Notes under the pieces: model-generated
Database searches by the model: none
The model's input: only the letters and a program-made list of their open reading frames with translations
Told to the model about the DNA's origin: nothing
Source: Mytilus californianus
Taxonomy: Eukaryota
DNA length: 64,000 nt
Direction of reading: 5' to 3'
Assembly: GCF_021869535.1 (NCBI RefSeq)
Contig: NW_026262582.1
Coordinates: 61,566,001-61,630,000 of the forward strand
In this document: piece after piece, positions 3,245 through 34,243 of the stretch
Numbering within the stretch: the first letter of the stretch is position 1
Layout of the letters: every line of letters starts with the position of its first letter
Made by a program: the position numbers and the translations under genes

Positions 3245-3695
3245 TTCAAGAGTCTATCCTAAATTGAGGTAAATTGTATGGCTTTCCAAATACCGTTTCG
3301 ATTCCTAACATCACTGAAGAGACATTAATTGTCGAAATCCGGATATGGTGTACAAAACCTTTGCACCTTTGTTTTGCGGTATATCATCTTTTCCGCAAGT
3401 TTATTGTTTTCTGTTTAGTATCAAATTTATAATTAAGATCCATTTATTACATCGGTGATCCGTTTATTTGGCAATCGACAACGGCAGTCAGCAGGGTTTA
3501 AGAACATTTGTTGTTCGACCTGTTAGTCAAATGCGTTTTGTTAAAATATACTTTTTCACTTTTTTGGTCTTTTGGAAAATGTTGTTTTTAGACCGCTCTA
3601 ACAAGAAATTTGTTTTGCATGCACACGTATAAAAATTGCGGTTTTTATCCAACGCAATCATAGGTTTGAACGTTGTTTTCAATTTAGACTTGTAT
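3245..3695 (+). repeat. Interspersed repeat, second copy at 21810-22130
   Basis: Long near-identical tracts (aattcaagagtctatcctaaattgagg..; cacgtataaaaattgcggtttttatccaacgcaatcatagg..) in both places. Confidence 0.75.
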
Positions 3696-5965: not shown

Positions 5966-6607
5966 CAATTGAACATATTGCACCTAACTGTATGTAAGTT
6001 AAATGTCAGACGATAAACAGAGACTTTAATGACCAGTGGTACAATATTTAACGAAAATGATGTCTTGAGAAACCATGTATCCAATATATCATGTATATGG
6101 AATCATAAATGTGATTAAAATAAATCTAAACATGTTTTGCATAACTAACTAATTTTCGCAAATAATTCATTTTCGCAAGAAGAAAATTGAAGCAAATATA
6201 AATCGTCGCGAATATTAAAAACATGTTTCGTTATATCAAGTAATTCAGACAATTAGGATATCGCGATATTTAACTGCCGCGAAATCCATTTAAACGAGCT
6301 AAACGCGATATAAATTAAAATATACGCGAAAATAAGCTTACATAAGAGAAACCATGGGTATGCTATAGCTTTGAGAGAAAAAAAAGACCTGTTAACACCC
6401 TGCAGTATCAAAAGTTCACCTCACATTTTATGCCATATAAGAAGATTTGAATATGACATCAAAGTTATTCACACTCTTTCAGAGATGTTGGCTTCCTGGT
6501 CAATTATCACCTAGTTAAATAAAAATTGGCGAAACAATTTTATTTATCAGTCACTTCGAAAAGATTGGCAAGAGAAGCACTTTGATCAGAACGTTTTCAA
6601 AGACGTG

Positions 6608-8014
6608 ATGTTCAACGAGGAACGCGCAGAGGTAGTGTTGTCTTATAAACAGACATTGTTTCCAGGAAATATAAAGAAAAATTTTCAGCATCGTTACTTT
6701 ATCCAGAGACGTAGTGGCTCTTCATCCTCAGTTGAATCAACTTTTGACCTGGCAGATACTGCAATATCTCTTTCAAACTCACCCTCTCAGGAACGTAGTA
6801 TTCCAGATTTGCCAAGCAATTCACCAAGTAAGTCAACATCTTTCCAAACTGAATCAGCAAATGCAATAGAAGATAATGATGTGTTTGTGGAGTCTTCATT
6901 AAAGGTTCTGACACATAAACGGTCAGCACATGGTTCTCCAGAGTTTTCAAAGATGTCATTCACACAGCAAGGACATCCATTAACTACTAAATGTTTTGGA
7001 TCTGATCATGCAACTACTAAACAACAAGTTCACCGCGTTGAACGTCTTCCTTCTCAAAAACAACCTGGGTCGAAAATTGCGATCGGCAATAAAGAACAAG
7101 AAAGACATGGACTTCAAAATACAAAACCACAACTTTCGAATCTGTATCATCATTTGCCAGGGTTTCTTTCACCACAGTTTGTGTCGTCTGCAAAGTCAAT
7201 ACCGTTCCACTCAGTTCACGAAGGATGCCATAAGTTTTTTAACTTCAATACGTCTACCCCATTTGCTGGCTTCATTTCAGACCCAGAGTTATCTACACCT
7301 AGTCCTGGCATGTCGACTGGAATTCATTTTGAATTTCCGCCGAGAGCAAGGATGTATAACTCAATGTCAGAACTGAATCGAATGGCAATGTCTCCATTCG
7401 GATGCTTTCCTAATCAGAATATCAATATGTCTCAGATACCGTCTAAACACTCAACTTTAAAACAAAATCGGGATCAGCGCAGAACTTTGTCCGACTCTGA
7501 TGCTTACAAATGTCCAGTGTGTAATCAAATGTTTCTTTCATTTGATACCTTAGCAAAACACATGGCAAAACACTTACCAACAGAAACTATCTTACAGGGT
7601 GAAAATAGCAAAATACACTTATGTAAAGTTTGCAATAGATCTTTTTCTCGTAGCGACATGTTGACACGCCACATGAGATTGCACACAGGCATTAAACCAT
7701 ATGAATGCAGTGATTGTGGACAAGTGTTTAGTCGTAGTGACCATTTAAACACACATAAACGCACCCATACCGGTGAAAAGCCGTATCGATGTCCTCAGTG
7801 TCCGTATGCTGCATGCAGACGCGATATGGTTACACGTCACATGAGAACACACAACAAAAGGTCGGTAAAAAGGAATAGGTTACTATCAGTACCATATTTT
7901 AAAGATGATTTACGCATGAATTCAGTGTCAAGAACAGATACGACAGGTTCACAAGATATGTCTGGACGTTCATGTTCACAATCCAGCATTGAAAGTGTTG
8001 ATATTGACTGTTGA
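6608..8014 (+). CDS. klu: Klumpfuss-like (EGR/WT1-class) C2H2 zinc-finger transcription factor
   Basis: Uninterrupted ORF (ATG 6608, TGA 8012-8014). Four C2H2 fingers: CPVC..LAKHMAKH, CKVC..RSDMLTRHMRLH, CSDC..RSDHLNTHKRTH and CPQCPYAACRRDMVTRHMRTH, with TGIKPY/TGEKPY linkers. The last three fingers match the Drosophila Klumpfuss finger array as I recall it. The N-terminus is uncertain because the frame is open back to 6515. Confidence 0.88.
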   Translation: MFNEERAEVVLSYKQTLFPGNIKKNFQHRYFIQRRSGSSSSVESTFDLADTAISLSNSPSQERSIPDLPSNSPSKSTSFQTESANAIEDNDVFVESSLKVLTHKRSAHGSPEFSKMSFTQQGHPLTTKCFGSDHATTKQQVHRVERLPSQKQPGSKIAIGNKEQERHGLQNTKPQLSNLYHHLPGFLSPQFVSSAKSIPFHSVHEGCHKFFNFNTSTPFAGFISDPELSTPSPGMSTGIHFEFPPRARMYNSMSELNRMAMSPFGCFPNQNINMSQIPSKHSTLKQNRDQRRTLSDSDAYKCPVCNQMFLSFDTLAKHMAKHLPTETILQGENSKIHLCKVCNRSFSRSDMLTRHMRLHTGIKPYECSDCGQVFSRSDHLNTHKRTHTGEKPYRCPQCPYAACRRDMVTRHMRTHNKRSVKRNRLLSVPYFKDDLRMNSVSRTDTTGSQDMSGRSCSQSSIESVDIDC

Positions 8015-28727: not shown

Positions 28728-29010
28728 CTAAAGAATAATGAGGGAAAGACCTTCTAGTTTCGGTAATCTCAAGTTCACTGGGATATATGAGATGCAAGCA
28801 CTCATTGAAAAGTGGGTTATTGGGTGACAGCACATCATCAATATATCTGAAAGTGAAATTAAACAACTTTGCATAATGGTTGTTTTTGTCTTTGAGAAGG
28901 CCAGTAGGGGTGCATAACTAGTACCAATTGAAACACCAACTGTCTGTTGAAATATCAACCCCCTAAATTTATCAGATAAGCTGTCGCTCAAAAAGTCCAG
29001 CATTTGATGA
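28728..29010 (-). mobile_element. Penelope-like RT fragment
   Basis: MLDFL..FQQTVGVSIGTSYAPLL, then after a frameshift FNFTFRYIDDVLSPNN..LIYPSELEITET. Confidence 0.85.
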
Positions 29011-29059
29011 TATCTTCTGTGTATTTGTTTTTGGAAGTAGTACTAGTGCTGTTATCGGC

Positions 29060-29278
29060 ATTTTATGCGACTGTCATACAAATGAGAGGTTTAACTAACC
29101 ATAAAACAAGGTTTAATCCACCATTTTCTACATAAGGAAATGACTGTACCAAGTCAGGAATATGACAGTTGTTTTCCATTTGTTTTATATGTTTGAGCTT
29201 TTGATTTTGCCATTTGATAAGGGACTTTCCGTTTTGAATTTTCCTTGGAGTTCGGTATTTTTGTTAATTTACTTTTTT
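29060..29278 (-). repeat. High-copy repeat copy ~1 kb upstream of the cGLR (GGGACTTTCC at 29221-29230)
   Basis: Reverse-complement match to 11545-11760. Confidence 0.8.
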
Positions 29279-30213
29279 ATTCACAATATAAGATTTTTCA
29301 TTAATAAATCAGAATATTTGTATCTCCGATTCCCATTTTTGTCGAAAAAGATGAGCTATAGTAAAAATTCTTTTTCAAGTACATTCATATAAAAAAAGGC
29401 ACAGGACACCAATGGTTAAGAATTCAGAATTCTCCCGATTGAATGCTAAAACGCATACTATGAAATACTTGCAACATTTCATAACCGACACCTTATGAAA
29501 ATTTTTAAAACTAATCCTCCGAGAGTTACACAGAATTTAACCCTTTCCCTACACTTGTTTTTTTTTTTGTTTAATCTGTCTAATCAGGTGACAACCTTAT
29601 TATCAATACTGAGCTGACAAACGACCGGTCCAACAAATAACAGTTGTTACCAAGGTTATTTGGCACGTTAAGAGCTTGAATGATAAACTTCCGCATGTGT
29701 CAATGATGTCAAATTATCTTTCCATTTTGCCACTGAGTAACCACTGTATAATAATTTTTTGTATATATATTTTGACATGCAAATTAAAATCATTCATTAT
29801 AAGTTCCATTTCATAAATATTTGATAATAATCAACAAGAATACAGATCCTTATTTATCAAGTTGTAAATGTTTATTTAATATAGTAGTCGCTTTCTCAAA
29901 TTATATTTATTCATTTCAAACAGTTATTGATTCTCAAATTATCTTTATTTATTTTTCATAGTAATGTTTATCTCCTATTCATTCACCTGTGACAGGTAGT
30001 AAACGACCAACAAAAACGTATGTGTACATGTAATGTAAATAGTGTGACTATCATGTGACAGATCAAAGTGTAATAAATAATAATATCCGTGTATGTTATC
30101 GTTTGAACTGATTTACAATACACAATGCATGAGCATGCTACAAAACAAGGAAGTCATTTAGCAACTGATTTAAAAGAATAAAGTTTTTTATACAAAGGAT
30201 TGGATTAGATAGT

Positions 30214-32415
30214 ATGGAAACCTTTATGAAAGTGAAGGGCATAGCACTGCCTAATAAGAATAAGAAATTTGTTGATAATTCCAATTCTTTGCTGGGCCAT
30301 ACAAGTATTAGAGATAGGATTTGGGACGAGGACCTTCATGATGAAGATAGCATTAACAAATTCAAGGAATTTTCCTCTGGTCTATTGTCACTCGATGAAA
30401 TTGAATTGACCAACGTTTGTAATGCGCTCGATTTTGAACAATGTGTTTCCGTGGACGATCCTAAAACTACGGAGATTGTTACAAGTATAGAATGTTTCAT
30501 AACTTCTCTCCTTCGAAAGGTAGGAGAAATTGATGCACGATTTAAGTCTTCCCTTATCAAGGGTGGTAGTTTTTATGACGGAACGAAAATAGGAGAAATA
30601 GATGAGTTCGACTTTGTAGCACGAATTGATTCTTTATCAAAAGAAGGGGTTCTCGAGGCCCGGGAAGCAAAACAAAAGAAAGGTTTTGTGTTTCTGGCCG
30701 TTAAGGACAGGAAAACATTGAAGGAATTTGAAGATTTTATCAATACTGATGGAGTAATTTCTGTTCAGATGTTTAAAGAGCATTTTTCAGACCTTTTATT
30801 TTCTGCTCTGTCTGAAATTGAGATACCAGAAAATATTATTCCATCTAGCAGATTTAACAGTGGAGATGAATACGATGATGACTGGGTACCATTGCGCCAT
30901 GGGCCTTGTGCGAAACTAGATTTGACATACATTTGCAATACAACGCCAGATATTGTTGAAATTGACATAGATATTGCACCTGGCATCGCATTTCCAAATA
31001 AGATGTATATTCCACCAGTTCTTGAGAAGCTTACTCATTTACATCCAAACGAATTTCTTCAAACATTGAAAGAACTGTGCGACAAGGAAGAAATATGTGT
31101 TGTTCCATTCGATTTTGATACTACAGAGAAAATAGGTGAGTCGTCGTGGACTTATAAATACAGCGATACCTGGAGAATTTCTTTTTCCTCCATTGAAAAA
31201 GCTGTGTTTTCGTTATACAGTCACAAAAGTACAGAAAAGACACTTTATAGACTTCTAAAAATTCTAAAGGAATTTCACTTTCAGCAGTCTGATGATGTCA
31301 TCGAAAAAAGTGGATCCAAACACTTGAAAGGTAATGAGCCACCAAGAACAATAATGTCTACAAGTGGTTTAACCATCCAGCCCTTATTCAGCCGAGGCGA
31401 TGACGAGGAGGGAGAGTCAAAGGAGTCAGAAAATCAAGAAGTAGATTTTAAGGAAAGATTTTGTGTTGAATCAGTATTCCAAAAAACAAAACATGAAGCC
31501 AATGATTACGAGGTCGCTTATGGTGACAACATACAAGAAAATACAATATCTGTAAAAGATCTGATAGTCTGTCCAAAAGAGCAAATGAAGACACCAGCAC
31601 GTTATGTTGATAAAAATGATAAAATAAGCATCAAAACATCAGAAGTAAATAAGTCAAGCAACATTTCCCTAAACACAAGAGTGGCAACACCATCTGAAAA
31701 TCAAGAAAGCCGATATAAGGAATACAAACCAAAACGTCCGAATCATTCTGATCAGAAAATGGAATGTACAAATAATGGAACGAGTACTCAAAGTGTTGAT
31801 GAACATAATTCAGATGGTACAAGTTTCCCAGACAAAATAAATCTTATATGTGGCATAAATCAAAGGACAAGTGATTTACATGATAATGAGGGGTTGACTG
31901 AACCTGGAAGTAGCGTTGGCTGTTGCATGCAGACTACCAGCTTTGAATGTCTTCAGAATTATTCGACCAGTTCCAACATTTCTAAAATAAATGACATAGA
32001 GATTCTGTATTTGAGAGAGAAGGCTTCTGATGTGGTCAGTGAAGATCTATTCGATTCAAAAACTGAGCCAGGTACACTGATTTCACAGACAACTACTTTC
32101 GGAGATACTTTAAAGATTTTGAAATACAGAGAGTCCTTGCCTCTTTTTAAGACTTACTATTTAAAGATGCTCTTTCTGGCAATGAAAACAGCATACCCTA
32201 GAGATGACGACTGGACTGAGGACAAACTATGTTCTCTTGTGATATCGGCACTACAAATGTTATACTATGCTTTCTCGTCCAAACAGAAGGGATTTCTCAA
32301 TTACTGGTTCCAAGATTATGTGGAAAATCGTACGCGAGAATCTACATCGATTGAAATTCTTTTCTGTTTGCAAGAAACACTAACAATGTTCAGAAATTTG
32401 CAAGGAGTCCAGTAG
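30214..32415 (+). CDS. cGLR: cGAS-like receptor (cGLR; Mab-21/cGAS-family nucleotidyltransferase), 733 aa, with a large internal insertion
   Basis: Single ORF. It carries the NTase signature GGSFYDGTKIGEIDEFDF (cf. human cGAS GSYYEHVKISAPNEFDV), a GPCAKL strand, the third acidic site IDIDIAP, WRISFSSIEK (cf. WRLSFSHIEK), LLKILK, and C-lobe motifs FKTYYLKMLF, DDDW and FLNYW (cf. SYHVKTAFF, QW, LENYF). Confidence 0.9.
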   Translation: METFMKVKGIALPNKNKKFVDNSNSLLGHTSIRDRIWDEDLHDEDSINKFKEFSSGLLSLDEIELTNVCNALDFEQCVSVDDPKTTEIVTSIECFITSLLRKVGEIDARFKSSLIKGGSFYDGTKIGEIDEFDFVARIDSLSKEGVLEAREAKQKKGFVFLAVKDRKTLKEFEDFINTDGVISVQMFKEHFSDLLFSALSEIEIPENIIPSSRFNSGDEYDDDWVPLRHGPCAKLDLTYICNTTPDIVEIDIDIAPGIAFPNKMYIPPVLEKLTHLHPNEFLQTLKELCDKEEICVVPFDFDTTEKIGESSWTYKYSDTWRISFSSIEKAVFSLYSHKSTEKTLYRLLKILKEFHFQQSDDVIEKSGSKHLKGNEPPRTIMSTSGLTIQPLFSRGDDEEGESKESENQEVDFKERFCVESVFQKTKHEANDYEVAYGDNIQENTISVKDLIVCPKEQMKTPARYVDKNDKISIKTSEVNKSSNISLNTRVATPSENQESRYKEYKPKRPNHSDQKMECTNNGTSTQSVDEHNSDGTSFPDKINLICGINQRTSDLHDNEGLTEPGSSVGCCMQTTSFECLQNYSTSSNISKINDIEILYLREKASDVVSEDLFDSKTEPGTLISQTTTFGDTLKILKYRESLPLFKTYYLKMLFLAMKTAYPRDDDWTEDKLCSLVISALQMLYYAFSSKQKGFLNYWFQDYVENRTRESTSIEILFCLQETLTMFRNLQGVQ

Positions 32416-32465
32416 ACCAATAGTTCCTACTTCGCCTTGGAAATTTACTGCAAATACAACTACGT

Positions 32466-32625
32466 TTTTAACACATAAATGAACAAAAAAGTCAATAAAA
32501 TCTATGTCCTGATTATCCATGGCATTGTCCATGTGCATCAATTTTTTTTAACACATAAATGAACAAAAAAGTCAATAAAATCTATGTCCTGATTATCCAT
32601 GGCATTGTCCATGTGCATCAATTTT
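32466..32625 (+). repeat. Essentially perfect 80-bp tandem duplication in the presumed cGLR 3' UTR, each unit with AATAAA
   Basis: acacataaat at 32471 and 32551; AATAAA at 32494 and 32574. Confidence 0.9.
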
Positions 32626-34243
32626 CTCTTTATTCAACACAGGCATATGTGTATCAGCTTTTAAAACCGGAACGCTAACACCATAGGAAATTAATTCATC
32701 GTAGATACCAAGATTAAAATTGTGTTCACCAAACGCGCATTTCGTCTACAAAAGACTTATCAATGACGCTCGAATCATTGCTGACTATATAAATGAATAA
32801 TTATAAACTCTTCAAAGATACCAGGCTTATAATTTTGTAATCCAGACTTAAGTGTTTCATATGTCCTAGAATACTTATAAACCTCTGCTTTTCTGCACAA
32901 ATTCCTCCATTTTTCTTAGTTAACACTCGAAAGGTTTTGTATGTACCATTTTCTTGTATAACAGGATTATAAAAATCCATATCAATCTTCATAAAAATAA
33001 AAGATTGTCTGAAAAAGTAAAGCTATTCAGTGTCCTAGAACAAGATATTGCTATCTTTATATGGCCATTCCCTTAAAAAAAATCAAAGTTATGACTCCAT
33101 GAATTGTCTAGCACTAGTAGGATAGAAACCTTATATATTTAATTAAACGTGTTATCATCCTAAATATGCAAGTAGTGTTCACAACTTGGTGTTTCATAAA
33201 AATTGTGTCAAAGGGATTAAGAAATACACATTAGGTACGATATCAAAACTATTTTCCTATTTCAACATCGTTTTAGAGGATAATGAAGTTTAGTTAGGTA
33301 AAAATGTTTATTCAAAATATAAATAAACTACAATGGTTCTACAAATGTTGCCATAAAAATGTAATACATTGTACAATTATGTTTGTTACTATAGAAACAA
33401 ATCATACAAATAACAATGTATGTACTTAAAAACAAACCTATAGCTTTTGAAAAATAGTGACTCTTTTTCAAATATTTTAGTTGGTAGCAGTCATATTCAT
33501 TTTAACTTTCAAACTACACTGGCACTTCAAATGACTCTTAAGCCAAAATGAGGCATACATGAATATCATATGAAAATTTTACTAACTTATATAATGGTAT
33601 TACATGTGTGCTACTTTGACGGGTCAAATCATTGACTTTAAAGCCAAACATACCTTAATGAAACAACCTAGGCCTGTTAGCATAGCTTTTAATAAAAATT
33701 GCAATTCTTTTAAACCATATGGTGTTAAATGATAGAACTATTACAAAATGGAGGTGATTGGTGTAAATAGGTTCATAGATTAAAAAGATCATCCTTTAAT
33801 TCAGAAAACCTTTCATAGAGCTTGCTCTGCAAATTATGGAGCATGCTCAGCTAATTATGGAGTATGCTCAGTTAGTACTTTTGTTTGGCAAAAGCAACAT
33901 GTTGCACAATACATTTATAGGATCTTTTATTACAAATTATACATTATTCAACGTTTTTGTTGATGTACCTCTGGCTGAACATGCTTTGAATTTTGAAATT
34001 AAAAGATCTATTTGATTGTCACCAATCTCAGCAAAAAATAAATATTAAGATATTTTGATTATCTTTAAGTTATAAAATAACTTTTGGCATAATGACGGAT
34101 ATATACTGAATATAGATCATGGTCATTAACCCTATCATATCTATTTCCTAAGAGACATTAAAGTTATAAAAACTTTTAATTTCATTTCTTAAAAATGTAT
34201 TCAAATTTGTTTCTCTCCTCTTATTTTGGTTCATCTTTTTGAA

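What the first reader, a model, noticed from the sequence alone, without database searches (positions are those of the whole stretch)
31282..32136. cGLR split by a ~280-aa low-complexity insertion within the Mab-21 C-lobe
Seen: the helix LLKILKEF (aa 347-354) and FKTYYLK (aa 645-651) are separated by about 290 residues rich in S, T, E, D, N and K, all in one open frame, while the catalytic GS..EFD..D motifs are intact. Established: in human cGAS the equivalent LKLMK and SYHVKT motifs are only about 20 residues apart, and the zinc thumb lies just before them. No such His/Cys cluster is present here. Inference: a probably disordered, acidic/polar loop next to the ligand-binding and dimerisation surface could act as an autoinhibitory nucleic-acid mimic, a protease-cleavable switch or pathogen-protease bait, or a condensate/scaffold tether. 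I do not know of a characterised cGLR with this architecture.
Basis: partly seen in the sequence, partly recalled or inferred. Interest (0 to 1): 0.85.

Follow-up and report, generated by a model that had tools for sequence, protein, structure and literature searches.

The report
cGAS-like receptor with ancient disordered loop
A mussel innate-immune enzyme of the cGAS family carries a roughly 270-residue floppy, acidic loop inside its catalytic domain. The loop is a real, translated, ancient feature shared by clams, oysters and sea anemones, and it holds short conserved motifs that look like docking sites, but what it does is untested.

Summary
Window 30214-32415 (+) is one 733-aa open frame encoding a cGAS-like receptor (cGLR). 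Its catalytic residues are intact (G118/S119, E131, D133, D253). About 270 extra residues lie between helix LLKILKEF and helix KTYYLKMLF.

The extra segment is not an intron:
- RNA reads and contigs cross it unspliced.
- Three mussel lineages keep the frame, and every indel is a multiple of three.
- Its near-neutral rate (dN/dS 0.7-0.9, against 0.22 in the core) would otherwise have produced about 13 stop codons.

The insert is predicted disordered (pLDDT below 50 for residues 381-619) and net acidic. It is not low-complexity.

The insert is not peculiar to this gene. It defines a family found in six bivalve orders (46-365 aa at the same site) and in anthozoans. In the anemone gene it is a 117-nt, phase 0-0 cassette exon.

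A profile alignment places the insert in the loop that in human cGAS is the KKH loop of DNA-binding site C.

Conserved pieces sit inside the variable spacer: an EPPST..T[VI][EQ]P anchor, a Ser/Asp/Glu cluster, and one or two copies of the motif E-phi-phi-Y-x-R.

Most likely it is a motif-bearing regulatory or docking arm. That mechanism is inferred, not shown. I rate it a new variant of a known kind, of moderate interest.

The parts
30214..32415 (+). Complete intronless CDS of a 733-aa cGAS-like receptor (stop codon included)
   Evidence: ORF list. Pfam Mab-21 aa 120-331 scores 32.1 bits (cut-off 24.1) and Mab-21_C aa 637-700 scores 26 bits (cut-off 24.1). The AF2 model aligns to mouse cGAS 4k9b at Z 28.9, rmsd 2.4 A, 329 residues, and to Cv-cGLR1 8gjw at Z 26.8.
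30562..30612 (+). Catalytic G-G-S (aa 117-119) and E131-x-D133 metal-binding motif
   Evidence: GGSFYDGTKIGEIDEFD aligns to human cGAS TGSYYEHVKISAPNEFD. It is conserved in all full-length family members.
30970..30972 (+). Third catalytic aspartate, D253, in IDIDIAP
   Evidence: Aligns to the D of human cGAS ISVDITLAL. It is nearly invariant in the family.
31252..31275 (+). C-lobe helix LLKILKEF (aa 347-354), the counterpart of human cGAS LKLMKYLL
   Evidence: Profile alignment. AF2 helix 340-355 with pLDDT above 90.
31309..31389 (+). Conserved junction/anchor SGSKHLK-GN-EPPRT-IMSTSGL-TIQPLF (aa 366-392). In the anemone, the exon 1/exon 2 boundary falls inside this element.
   Evidence: The EPP[S/R]T ... 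[ST][VI][EQ]P-phi pattern is conserved from anemone to bivalves. It is 80% three-way identical among the mussels. pLDDT is about 79 up to residue 380.
31354..32070 (+). Predicted intrinsically disordered segment (aa 381-619), the expanded loop
   Evidence: AF2 gives pLDDT below 50 and no secondary structure. dN/dS is 0.69-0.89 against 0.22-0.26 in the core. The EPPRT-to-KTY segment (aa 375-645) has net charge -15. No similarity outside the family.
31396..31443 (+). Acidic Ser/Asp/Glu cluster GDDEEGESKESENQEV (aa 395-410)
   Evidence: A net-acidic stretch (-6 to -22 over the first 70 loop residues) follows the anchor in every family member.
31744..31788 (+). Conserved island HSDQKMECTNNGTST (aa 511-525) inside the spacer
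   Evidence: 87% three-way identity among mussel orthologues, against 0-40% in neighbouring blocks.
31996..32019 (+). Short linear motif IEILYLRE (aa 595-602), an instance of E-phi-phi-Y-x-R
   Evidence: The strict pattern E[IVLM][IVLMT]Y.R occurs 13 times in 10 of 13 non-redundant inserts. Shuffles give a mean of 0.02, and the cores have none. Caveat: the pattern was defined post hoc on the same sequences.
32062..32148 (+). Conserved re-entry segment TEPGTLISQTTTFGDTLKILKYRESLPLF (aa 617-645), ending in the family-wide YRxSxPLx
   Evidence: 80-93% three-way identity. YRxSxPL aligns to human cGAS FKDKKHL, the KKH loop. AF2 draws a hairpin at 622-636 with only moderate confidence (pLDDT 56-58).
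32149..32412 (+). Remainder of the C-lobe, starting with helix KTYYLKMLFLAMK, the counterpart of cGAS SYHVKTAFFHV
   Evidence: Pfam Mab-21_C. Profile alignment. pLDDT 89-96.

Best explanation
This is an intact, transcribed, intronless gene for a member of an old, apparently low-copy clade of cGAS-like receptors found in bivalves and anthozoans.

Shown:
- The fold is a complete cGAS-type nucleotidyltransferase with all catalytic residues.
- The loop joining the two C-lobe helices, which in human cGAS is the basic KKH loop of DNA-binding site C, is replaced by a long, translated, net-acidic segment that is predicted disordered.
- In the sea anemone orthologue this loop is a separate 117-nt, phase 0-0 exon of 39 residues.
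- In bivalves the coding sequence has no introns and the loop has grown to about 100-365 residues. In Mya arenaria an internal segment of the loop is duplicated.
- The loop is a mosaic. It has a conserved anchor (EPPST..T[VI][EQ]P-phi), a Ser/Asp/Glu cluster, a spacer evolving close to neutrally, one or two copies of the motif E-phi-phi-Y-x-R, and a conserved re-entry (YRxSxPLxKTY).

Inferred:
- The loop works as a flexible regulatory or docking arm.
- It removes a site-C-type basic nucleic-acid contact and instead presents short linear motifs, some probably phosphorylatable, to a partner protein.
- That partner would either control the enzyme or relay its signal.
- The spacer matters mainly for length and charge.
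For: Gene and fold.

Translated rather than spliced:
- Stranded RNA reads (X21) lie on the sense strand inside 31265-31415 and 31869-32321, with no joints in the gene.
- X1 contigs run continuously over 31141-31849 and 31868-32512, while single-copy flanks are uncovered.
- The contig of a sister species (X4) differs by indels of 3, 12 and about 36 nt (all).
- Orthologues of 749 aa and 716 aa keep the frame through indels of 1, 4, 20 and 33 codons.
- Neutral drift would be expected to create about 13 stops on this tree (P of none about 1.6e-6).

Family trait: the distance between the two helices is 65-385 aa in relatives against 12 in a canonical cGLR.

Gene structures: the CDS is a single exon in Mytilus trossulus, Saccostrea and Mya. 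The Actinostola exon 2 equals the loop exactly.

Position in the cGAS fold: together with PMC9475664 and PMC8365253.

Disorder: and for the oyster orthologue.

Acidity.

Motif enrichment.

Conserved islands and rate contrast.
Against: - No functional data exist.
- dN/dS of the spacer (0.69-0.89; 95% CI reaching 1.1-1.6) cannot be told apart from neutrality, so most of the loop may carry no sequence-specific function.
- The E-phi-phi-Y-x-R motif was defined after looking at the data, and it matches no motif class I could name.
- One close relative (P0002) has EFLYLR, and three others (P0010, P0013, P0017) have no strict copy.
- AF2 does not dock any part of the loop on the core with confidence.
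- RNA support in the window species is thin: about ten reads from a 6% sample of one run, plus contigs whose RNA label is a guess.
Confidence: 0.6

Rival explanations
1. Tolerated neutral loop expansion. A permissive surface loop has inflated by slippage and duplication. The frame is kept only because the essential C-lobe lies downstream, and the loop itself does nothing specific.
For: Spacer dN/dS is 0.69-0.89 with confidence intervals that include 1. Length varies from 46 to 365 aa and most of the loop cannot be aligned between orders. AF2 finds no structure.
Against: Conserved islands lie within the spacer. The same 6-residue motif recurs at non-alignable positions in 10 of 13 inserts, often duplicated. 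Every insert is net acidic. No full-length bivalve member found has a short loop. The anchor motif is conserved between Cnidaria and Bivalvia.
Confidence: 0.2
2. Intramolecular autoinhibitor or nucleic-acid mimic. The acidic Ser/Asp/Glu segment folds back on a basic ligand-binding surface and is displaced by ligand or by phosphorylation.
For: An acidic cluster follows the anchor in every member. The loop emerges where human cGAS has a DNA-contacting loop.
Against: The core itself is strongly acidic (net -21 here; family median -16.5, against -3 in other Mab-21 hits). There is therefore no evidence of a broadly basic surface to mask. AF2 shows no docking.
Confidence: 0.12
3. Cleavable switch or pathogen-protease bait. 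Cutting the exposed loop separates or releases the lobes and changes activity.
For: It is a long, exposed, disordered loop in an immune protein, and the spacer evolves fast.
Against: No recognisable protease site is conserved. The conserved elements are the anchor, the tyrosine motif and the re-entry, not a cleavage-like sequence. The rate elevation fits relaxation, not positive selection (CI includes values below 1).
Confidence: 0.05
4. Artefact. The segment is a retained intron or 'exitron' that is removed from the functional mRNA, or the gene is a decaying pseudogene.
For: A donor-like AAG|GTAATG lies at 31330/31331. RNA depth is very low.
Against: The donor is absent in M. trossulus (AAATATTAC) and weaker in the third lineage. 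The only in-frame acceptor (AG at 32130-32131) lacks a pyrimidine tract. No joints appear in reads or contigs. The frame is preserved. The homologous segment is itself an exon in the anemone. Core dN/dS of 0.22 shows a gene under constraint.
Confidence: 0.03

Closest known systems
Human/mouse cGAS (MB21D1), catalytic domain
   Same: The bilobed Mab-21 nucleotidyltransferase fold (Z 28.9, rmsd 2.4 A over 329 residues). The GS and E-x-D...D catalytic residues. The same helix-loop-helix in the C-lobe.
   Different: No zinc thumb and no basic N-terminal tail. The 6-residue basic KKH loop (site C) is replaced by about 270 acidic disordered residues. The core is net acidic. Sequence identity is only 17-20%.
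Cv-cGLR1 of Crassostrea virginica (PDB 8gjw), and the cGLR1 of entry 8gjy whose species I did not establish (Li et al. 2023, PMC9980059)
   Same: These are the best sequence matches among solved structures (E 4e-8 with the single sequence, 2.6e-36 with the family profile). Both are invertebrate cGLRs lacking a zinc thumb.
   Different: Their loop between the LRILK-type and SYHLK-type helices is about a dozen residues. They belong to the expanded bivalve/cnidarian radiations, whereas I found only one or two copies of this clade per genome among the hits I looked at.
Shrimp Mab21 proteins that activate IKK-epsilon without nucleic-acid sensing (PMC12928593)
   Same: Invertebrate Mab-21 proteins proposed to signal through protein-protein contacts. 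This is the kind of role that motifs in the loop would fit.
   Different: Known to me only from the abstract. I did not compare sequences, and no equivalent loop is reported there. It is a lead, not a relationship.
Disordered regulatory regions of the cGAS-STING pathway (cGAS N-terminal tail; STING C-terminal tail with pLxIS and TBK1 motifs)
   Same: They work alike in principle: a disordered segment that carries short motifs and charge and is attached to a folded signalling domain (my own knowledge).
   Different: Those are terminal tails, basic in the case of cGAS. Here the region is internal and acidic, and its motifs (EPPST, E-phi-phi-Y-x-R) do not match pLxIS or the TBK1-binding motif.

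Membership tests
cGAS-like receptors (cGLR; Mab-21 / cGAS-OAS-type nucleotidyltransferases) | Mab-21 N-terminal NTase domain plus Mab-21 C-terminal helical domain | tested here: met
   Pfam PF03281 scores 32.1 bits and PF20266 scores 26 bits, both above the 24.1-bit cut-offs. The family profile matches cGLR1 at 2.6e-36 and cGAS at about 1e-28.
cGAS-like receptors (cGLR; Mab-21 / cGAS-OAS-type nucleotidyltransferases) | Bilobed cGAS fold | tested here: met
   The AF2 core has pLDDT above 90. Foldseek E 2e-13. VIA-align Z 28.9 over both lobes, model residues 68-728.
cGAS-like receptors (cGLR; Mab-21 / cGAS-OAS-type nucleotidyltransferases) | Complete active site: G-S loop, [E/D]-h-[E/D], and a third acidic residue | tested here: met
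   G118/S119, E131, D133 and D253 align to human cGAS G212/S213, E225, D227 and D319 (the human numbering is from my own knowledge). They are present in all full-length relatives.
cGAS-like receptors (cGLR; Mab-21 / cGAS-OAS-type nucleotidyltransferases) | Ligand-dependent synthesis of a cyclic di-/oligonucleotide that activates STING | not testable with these tools
   Needs a biochemical assay.
cGAS-like receptors (cGLR; Mab-21 / cGAS-OAS-type nucleotidyltransferases) | Basic nucleic-acid-binding surface | tested here: inconclusive
   Only net charge could be computed. The core is -21 (family median -16.5), against a median of -3 in other Mab-21 hits.
Vertebrate-type cGAS proper | Zinc thumb (H(X5)CC(X6)C) before the LKLMK helix | tested here: not met
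   The cGAS zinc-thumb residues align to a gap in the family profile. The window segment SLYSHKSTEKTLYRLLKILK has no Cys.
Vertebrate-type cGAS proper | Short basic KKH loop (site C) between the LKLMK and SYHVK helices | tested here: not met
   It is replaced by the acidic insertion. The definition of site C comes from PMC9475664.

The most novel reading that the evidence does not exclude
The expanded loop is a signalling platform in its own right. Its repeated E-phi-phi-Y-x-R motifs and the phosphorylatable acidic cluster would recruit a downstream kinase or adaptor directly to the cGLR. This ancient bivalve/anthozoan clade would then couple sensing to signalling, at least partly, without a diffusible nucleotide. 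In anthozoans, inclusion or skipping of the symmetric 117-nt exon would switch that coupling on or off.
Probability: 0.12. Interest if true: 0.8.

Novelty: new variant of a known kind. Interest (0 to 1): 0.5.

Why it matters
cGLRs are studied as compact enzymes whose regulation comes from ligand binding and, in vertebrate cGAS, from a basic terminal tail. Here a conserved, apparently low-copy clade has kept a large internal disordered arm at a defined surface loop across six bivalve orders and into anthozoans. The arm carries recurring short motifs.

If the motifs bind a partner, that gives a direct handle on how invertebrate cGLRs are regulated or wired to downstream pathways, which is largely unknown. 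It also offers a clean natural series for testing what such an arm does: a 39-residue cassette exon in anthozoans, about 100 residues in oysters, and 250-365 residues in mussels and clams.

If the arm proves neutral, it is still a well-documented case of a mini-exon expanding into a long disordered region inside an enzyme domain.

Tried and rejected
1. Internal duplication of the helix pair.
   - phmmer aligned SKHLK (aa 368-372) to SYHLK of 8gjw, and LKILK occurs twice (aa 348 and 633).
   - Rejected. In relatives the first site reads SGSGVLK, AGTSKIK or EESLPV, and the second LKILK is absent (INYRDS etc.). Only KTYxxKMLF is followed by the long helix.

2. Exitron or retained intron.
   - I looked by eye for GT..AG pairs in the DNA. 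The donor at 31331 with the CAG acceptor at 32129 shifts the frame. The only in-frame acceptor is weak, the donor is not conserved, and there are no joints.

3. Transposon or foreign origin of the insert.
   - Pfam finds nothing in it.
   - A region-restricted search found only the two mussel relatives.
   - There is no second copy in the window and no internal repeat.
   - The Atlas feature search scored 0.76, below the useful range.

4. Positive selection. Pairwise dN/dS stays below 1 and its confidence interval spans 1. With only three sequences, no site test was possible.

5. Intramolecular docking. AF2 of the mussel protein and of the shorter oyster orthologue leaves the loop below pLDDT 50. 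In the oyster model the anchor strand 393-397 pairs with the motif strand 436-440, but at pLDDT 31-41, so I give it no weight.

6. Naming the motif. From memory I compared it with pLxIS, ITIM/ITSM, YxxPhi, LIR, SIM, FFAT and TRAF motifs, and none fits the invariant E, Y and R positions. No motif database was available.

7. Literature. Searches for cGLR or Mab-21 with insertion, disordered, bivalve, Mytilus or oyster found no description of this architecture.

8. The end of contig L002 was inspected for a poly(A) tail to prove it is mRNA. None was present.
Full report
**The gene**

Window 30214..32415 (+) is the only long open frame in the region. It is 733 codons and starts with ATG. Pfam finds the Mab-21 nucleotidyltransferase domain at aa 120-331 and the Mab-21 C-terminal domain at aa 637-700, both above their curated cut-offs.

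The nearest solved structures by sequence are invertebrate cGAS-like receptors (8gjw, 8gjy), followed by cGAS. A profile built from relatives hits 8gjy at 2.6e-36 and dozens of cGAS entries near 1e-28.

An AlphaFold2 model built on 33 relatives has a confident core. Most 10-residue blocks of the core score above 90. By VIA-align it superposes on mouse cGAS at Z 28.9, rmsd 2.4 A over 329 residues, spanning model residues 68-728. It superposes on Cv-cGLR1 at Z 26.8.

The catalytic residues align with those of human cGAS: G118/S119, E131, D133 and D253. The cGAS zinc-thumb residues fall in a gap of the family profile. The gene is therefore a cGLR with a complete active site and no zinc thumb.

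**The observation**

LLKILKEF (aa 347-354) and FKTYYLK (aa 645-651) lie 291 residues apart in one frame. The five other frames of the same DNA contain 10-34 stops each. In human cGAS chains the corresponding LKLMK and SYHVK start 25 residues apart (counted in the alignment).

- The segment is only mildly enriched in S/T/E/D/N/K (52% against 44%).
- Its entropy is normal (4.04 against 4.10 bits). It is not low-complexity.

AlphaFold gives residues 381-619 a pLDDT below 50 and no secondary structure. The EPPRT-to-KTY segment (aa 375-645) has a net charge of -15.

**Is it exonic and translated?**

One true stranded RNA-seq run of the same species was available, and only about 6% of it was read. 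It puts a handful of reads on the sense strand within 31265-31415 and 31869-32321, with no joints in the gene.

A second run, whose RNA label is a guess, covers 30930-32512 continuously while leaving the single-copy flanks uncovered.

A contig from a sister species follows the gene from 30430 to 32381 at about 96% identity. Its indels of 3, 12 and about 36 nt all lie in the insert.

Two further mussel proteins carry the insert: 749 aa from a Logan contig, and 716 aa from Mytilus trossulus LOC134694818. Both are single open frames in their DNA. The M. trossulus locus is collinear with the window on both sides, so it is an orthologue.

Among the three sequences:
- The indels are 1, 4, 20 and 33 codons.
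- dN/dS is 0.22-0.26 in the core and 0.69-0.89 in the insert, with bootstrap intervals that include 1.
- At the observed synonymous divergence, neutral drift would be expected to create about 13 stop codons in the insert across this small tree (P of none about 1.6e-6).

The frame is thus maintained by selection, while most of the sequence is weakly constrained.

A donor-like AAG|GTAATG lies at 31330/31331. It is absent in M. trossulus and has no good in-frame acceptor. I regard the intron or exitron reading as essentially excluded, although RNA depth is low.

**A family trait, not a one-off**

An exhaustive HMMER search and two word-indexed searches recover relatives with extra sequence at exactly this site:

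| Taxon | Protein length (aa) |
|---|---|
| Mya arenaria | 800 |
| Sinanodonta woodiana | 801 and 729 |
| Potamilus streckersoni | 810 |
| Saccostrea cucullata | 586 |
| Oyster-like cluster seen in 218 member sequences | 605 |
| Pinctada imbricata, Ruditapes philippinarum, Dreissena polymorpha | partial models |
| Several unnamed ENA/JGI proteins | various |

Between the two helices these proteins have 65-385 residues, against 12 in a canonical cGLR from the same hit list. Every full-length member keeps the catalytic motifs.

Anthozoan relatives also exist: Actinostola (474 aa), Dendronephthya (488 aa) and Paramuricea. They have the same junction motif and a short loop of about 46-53 residues.

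**Origin**

The coding sequence is a single exon in the window, in M. trossulus, in Saccostrea and in Mya.

In Actinostola it has three exons with GT..AG borders that reproduce the protein exactly:
- Exon 1 ends at ...DEPPSTRVQ.
- Exon 2 is 117 nt, phase 0-0, and encodes VTSVQPLISRS...HKDLLQ.
- Exon 3 begins TYIFKSLLF.

The loop is therefore an old, symmetric mini-exon, which could in principle be skipped without a frameshift. In bivalves it is fused into an intronless gene and has expanded. In Mya an internal segment of the loop is duplicated.

Several short anthozoan gene models stop just after EPPST. This probably happens because they read on into that intron.

**Where it sits in the cGAS fold**

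The family profile aligns to human cGAS in two pieces. The first ends at ...LKLMKYLLEQLKERFKDK. The second starts at ERFKDKKHLDKFSSYHVKT, with the family's YRxSxPL opposite FKDKKHL.

This is the KKH loop (residues 427-432), one of the three elements of DNA-binding site C. Site C promotes multivalent DNA condensation and contacts the second nucleosome (PMC9475664 and PMC8365253).

In this clade, then, a short basic DNA-contact loop is replaced by a long acidic arm. The loop is not at the zinc-thumb/dimer interface.

**Anatomy of the arm**

Across the family five elements recur:
1. An anchor, SGSxxLK-xx-EPPST-x(5-7)-[ST][VI][EQ]P-phi. It is conserved from anemone to mussel.
2. A Ser/Asp/Glu cluster right after the anchor. 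The first 70 loop residues carry a net charge of -6 to -22 in every member.
3. A variable spacer.
4. One or two copies of E-phi-phi-Y-x-R. Examples are IEILYLRE here at aa 595-602, IEVVYDR twice in Mya, YEILYER in oysters, and EIIYLR/EIIYQR twice in unionids. The strict pattern occurs 13 times in 10 of 13 non-redundant inserts, against 0.02 in composition-matched shuffles and none in the cores. The pattern was defined post hoc and the sequences are related. However, the copies lie in regions that cannot be aligned between orders, and they have been duplicated independently.
5. A conserved re-entry, YRxSxPLxKTY.

Within Mytilus, three-way identity is 80% or more over the anchor (aa 361-390), at aa 511-525 and at aa 586-600, and again from aa 616 on. 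It falls to 0-13% in parts of the spacer.

**Mechanism**

The anatomy, the conservation pattern and the position are shown. Function is inferred.

The best-supported reading is a flexible regulatory or docking arm that presents short motifs to a partner. The spacer would supply reach and negative charge.

The core domain is itself strongly acidic (net -21; family median -16.5, against -3 for other Mab-21 hits), and neither AF2 model docks the arm.

A purely neutral expansion cannot be excluded for the spacer. It does not explain the conserved anchor, charge and motif.

A protease-bait role has no specific support.

The acidic core also leaves open that the ligand is not a nucleic acid. Many cGLRs are reported to have unknown ligands (my own recollection of Li et al. 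2023; not checked here).

**Novelty**

The family and fold are known. An internal disordered arm at this loop, conserved across Bivalvia and Anthozoa and derived from a cassette exon, was not found in four literature searches or in the text of Li et al. 2023.

I rate it a new variant of a known kind, of moderate interest. Disordered loop insertions are common in general, and the proposed function is untested.

**Limits**

- RNA evidence in the window species is thin.
- The taxon of several relatives is unknown.
- No motif database was available.
- The species of the window was not disclosed. It appears to be a mytilid about 15% diverged in coding DNA from M. trossulus.

Noticed in passing
window 32465-32625: A perfect two-copy tandem duplication of an 80-bp unit lies just downstream of the stop codon. 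Each copy contains an AATAAA. It is probably in the 3' UTR and looks recent.
   Followed up: partly
window 29000-29300 and 32624-32925: Two short segments flanking the gene have enormous depth in both the RNA-like and the DNA-like runs (up to millions of summed word depth), with many variant joints. They are high-copy interspersed repeats, MITE- or SINE-like. Copies also occur in the M. trossulus locus L001 at other positions.
   Followed up: partly
window 6605-8014 (+): A single-ORF 469-aa protein with a C-terminal array of C2H2 zinc fingers (Pfam zf-H2C2_2 at 3.5e-22). It is another intronless gene or a transposon-associated ORF in the same window.
   Followed up: partly
L005 1001-4511 (Actinostola sp.): The anemone orthologue has the loop as a 117-nt, phase 0-0 exon (locus 3530-3646) between introns of 1476 and 610 nt. 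Several short anthozoan gene models (P0019, P0162-P0166) end just after EPPST, probably because they read into intron 1.
   Followed up: yes
P0009 (Saccostrea cucullata) residues 393-397 and 436-440: In the AF2 model of the oyster orthologue, the conserved anchor strand (VTVEP) pairs with the YEILY motif strand. Confidence is only pLDDT 31-41, so this is a lead that the two conserved elements may interact, not a result.
   Followed up: partly
window 31315-31332: SKHLK (aa 368-372) mimics the SYHLK motif of canonical cGLRs and misled phmmer into aligning it to 8gjw. A donor-like AAG|GTAATG overlaps it. Neither feature is conserved in relatives.
   Followed up: yes
whole protein, and family cores: The folded core of this clade is unusually acidic for a presumed nucleic-acid sensor (net -21 here; family median -16.5, against -3 for other Mab-21 hits). 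This raises the question of what the ligand is.
   Followed up: partly
window 31735, 31910 and 32065-32095, as seen in run X4: The sister species (organism B) differs from the window by in-frame indels of 3, 12 and about 36 nt, and by denser substitutions in the insert than in the N-terminal domain.
   Followed up: partly
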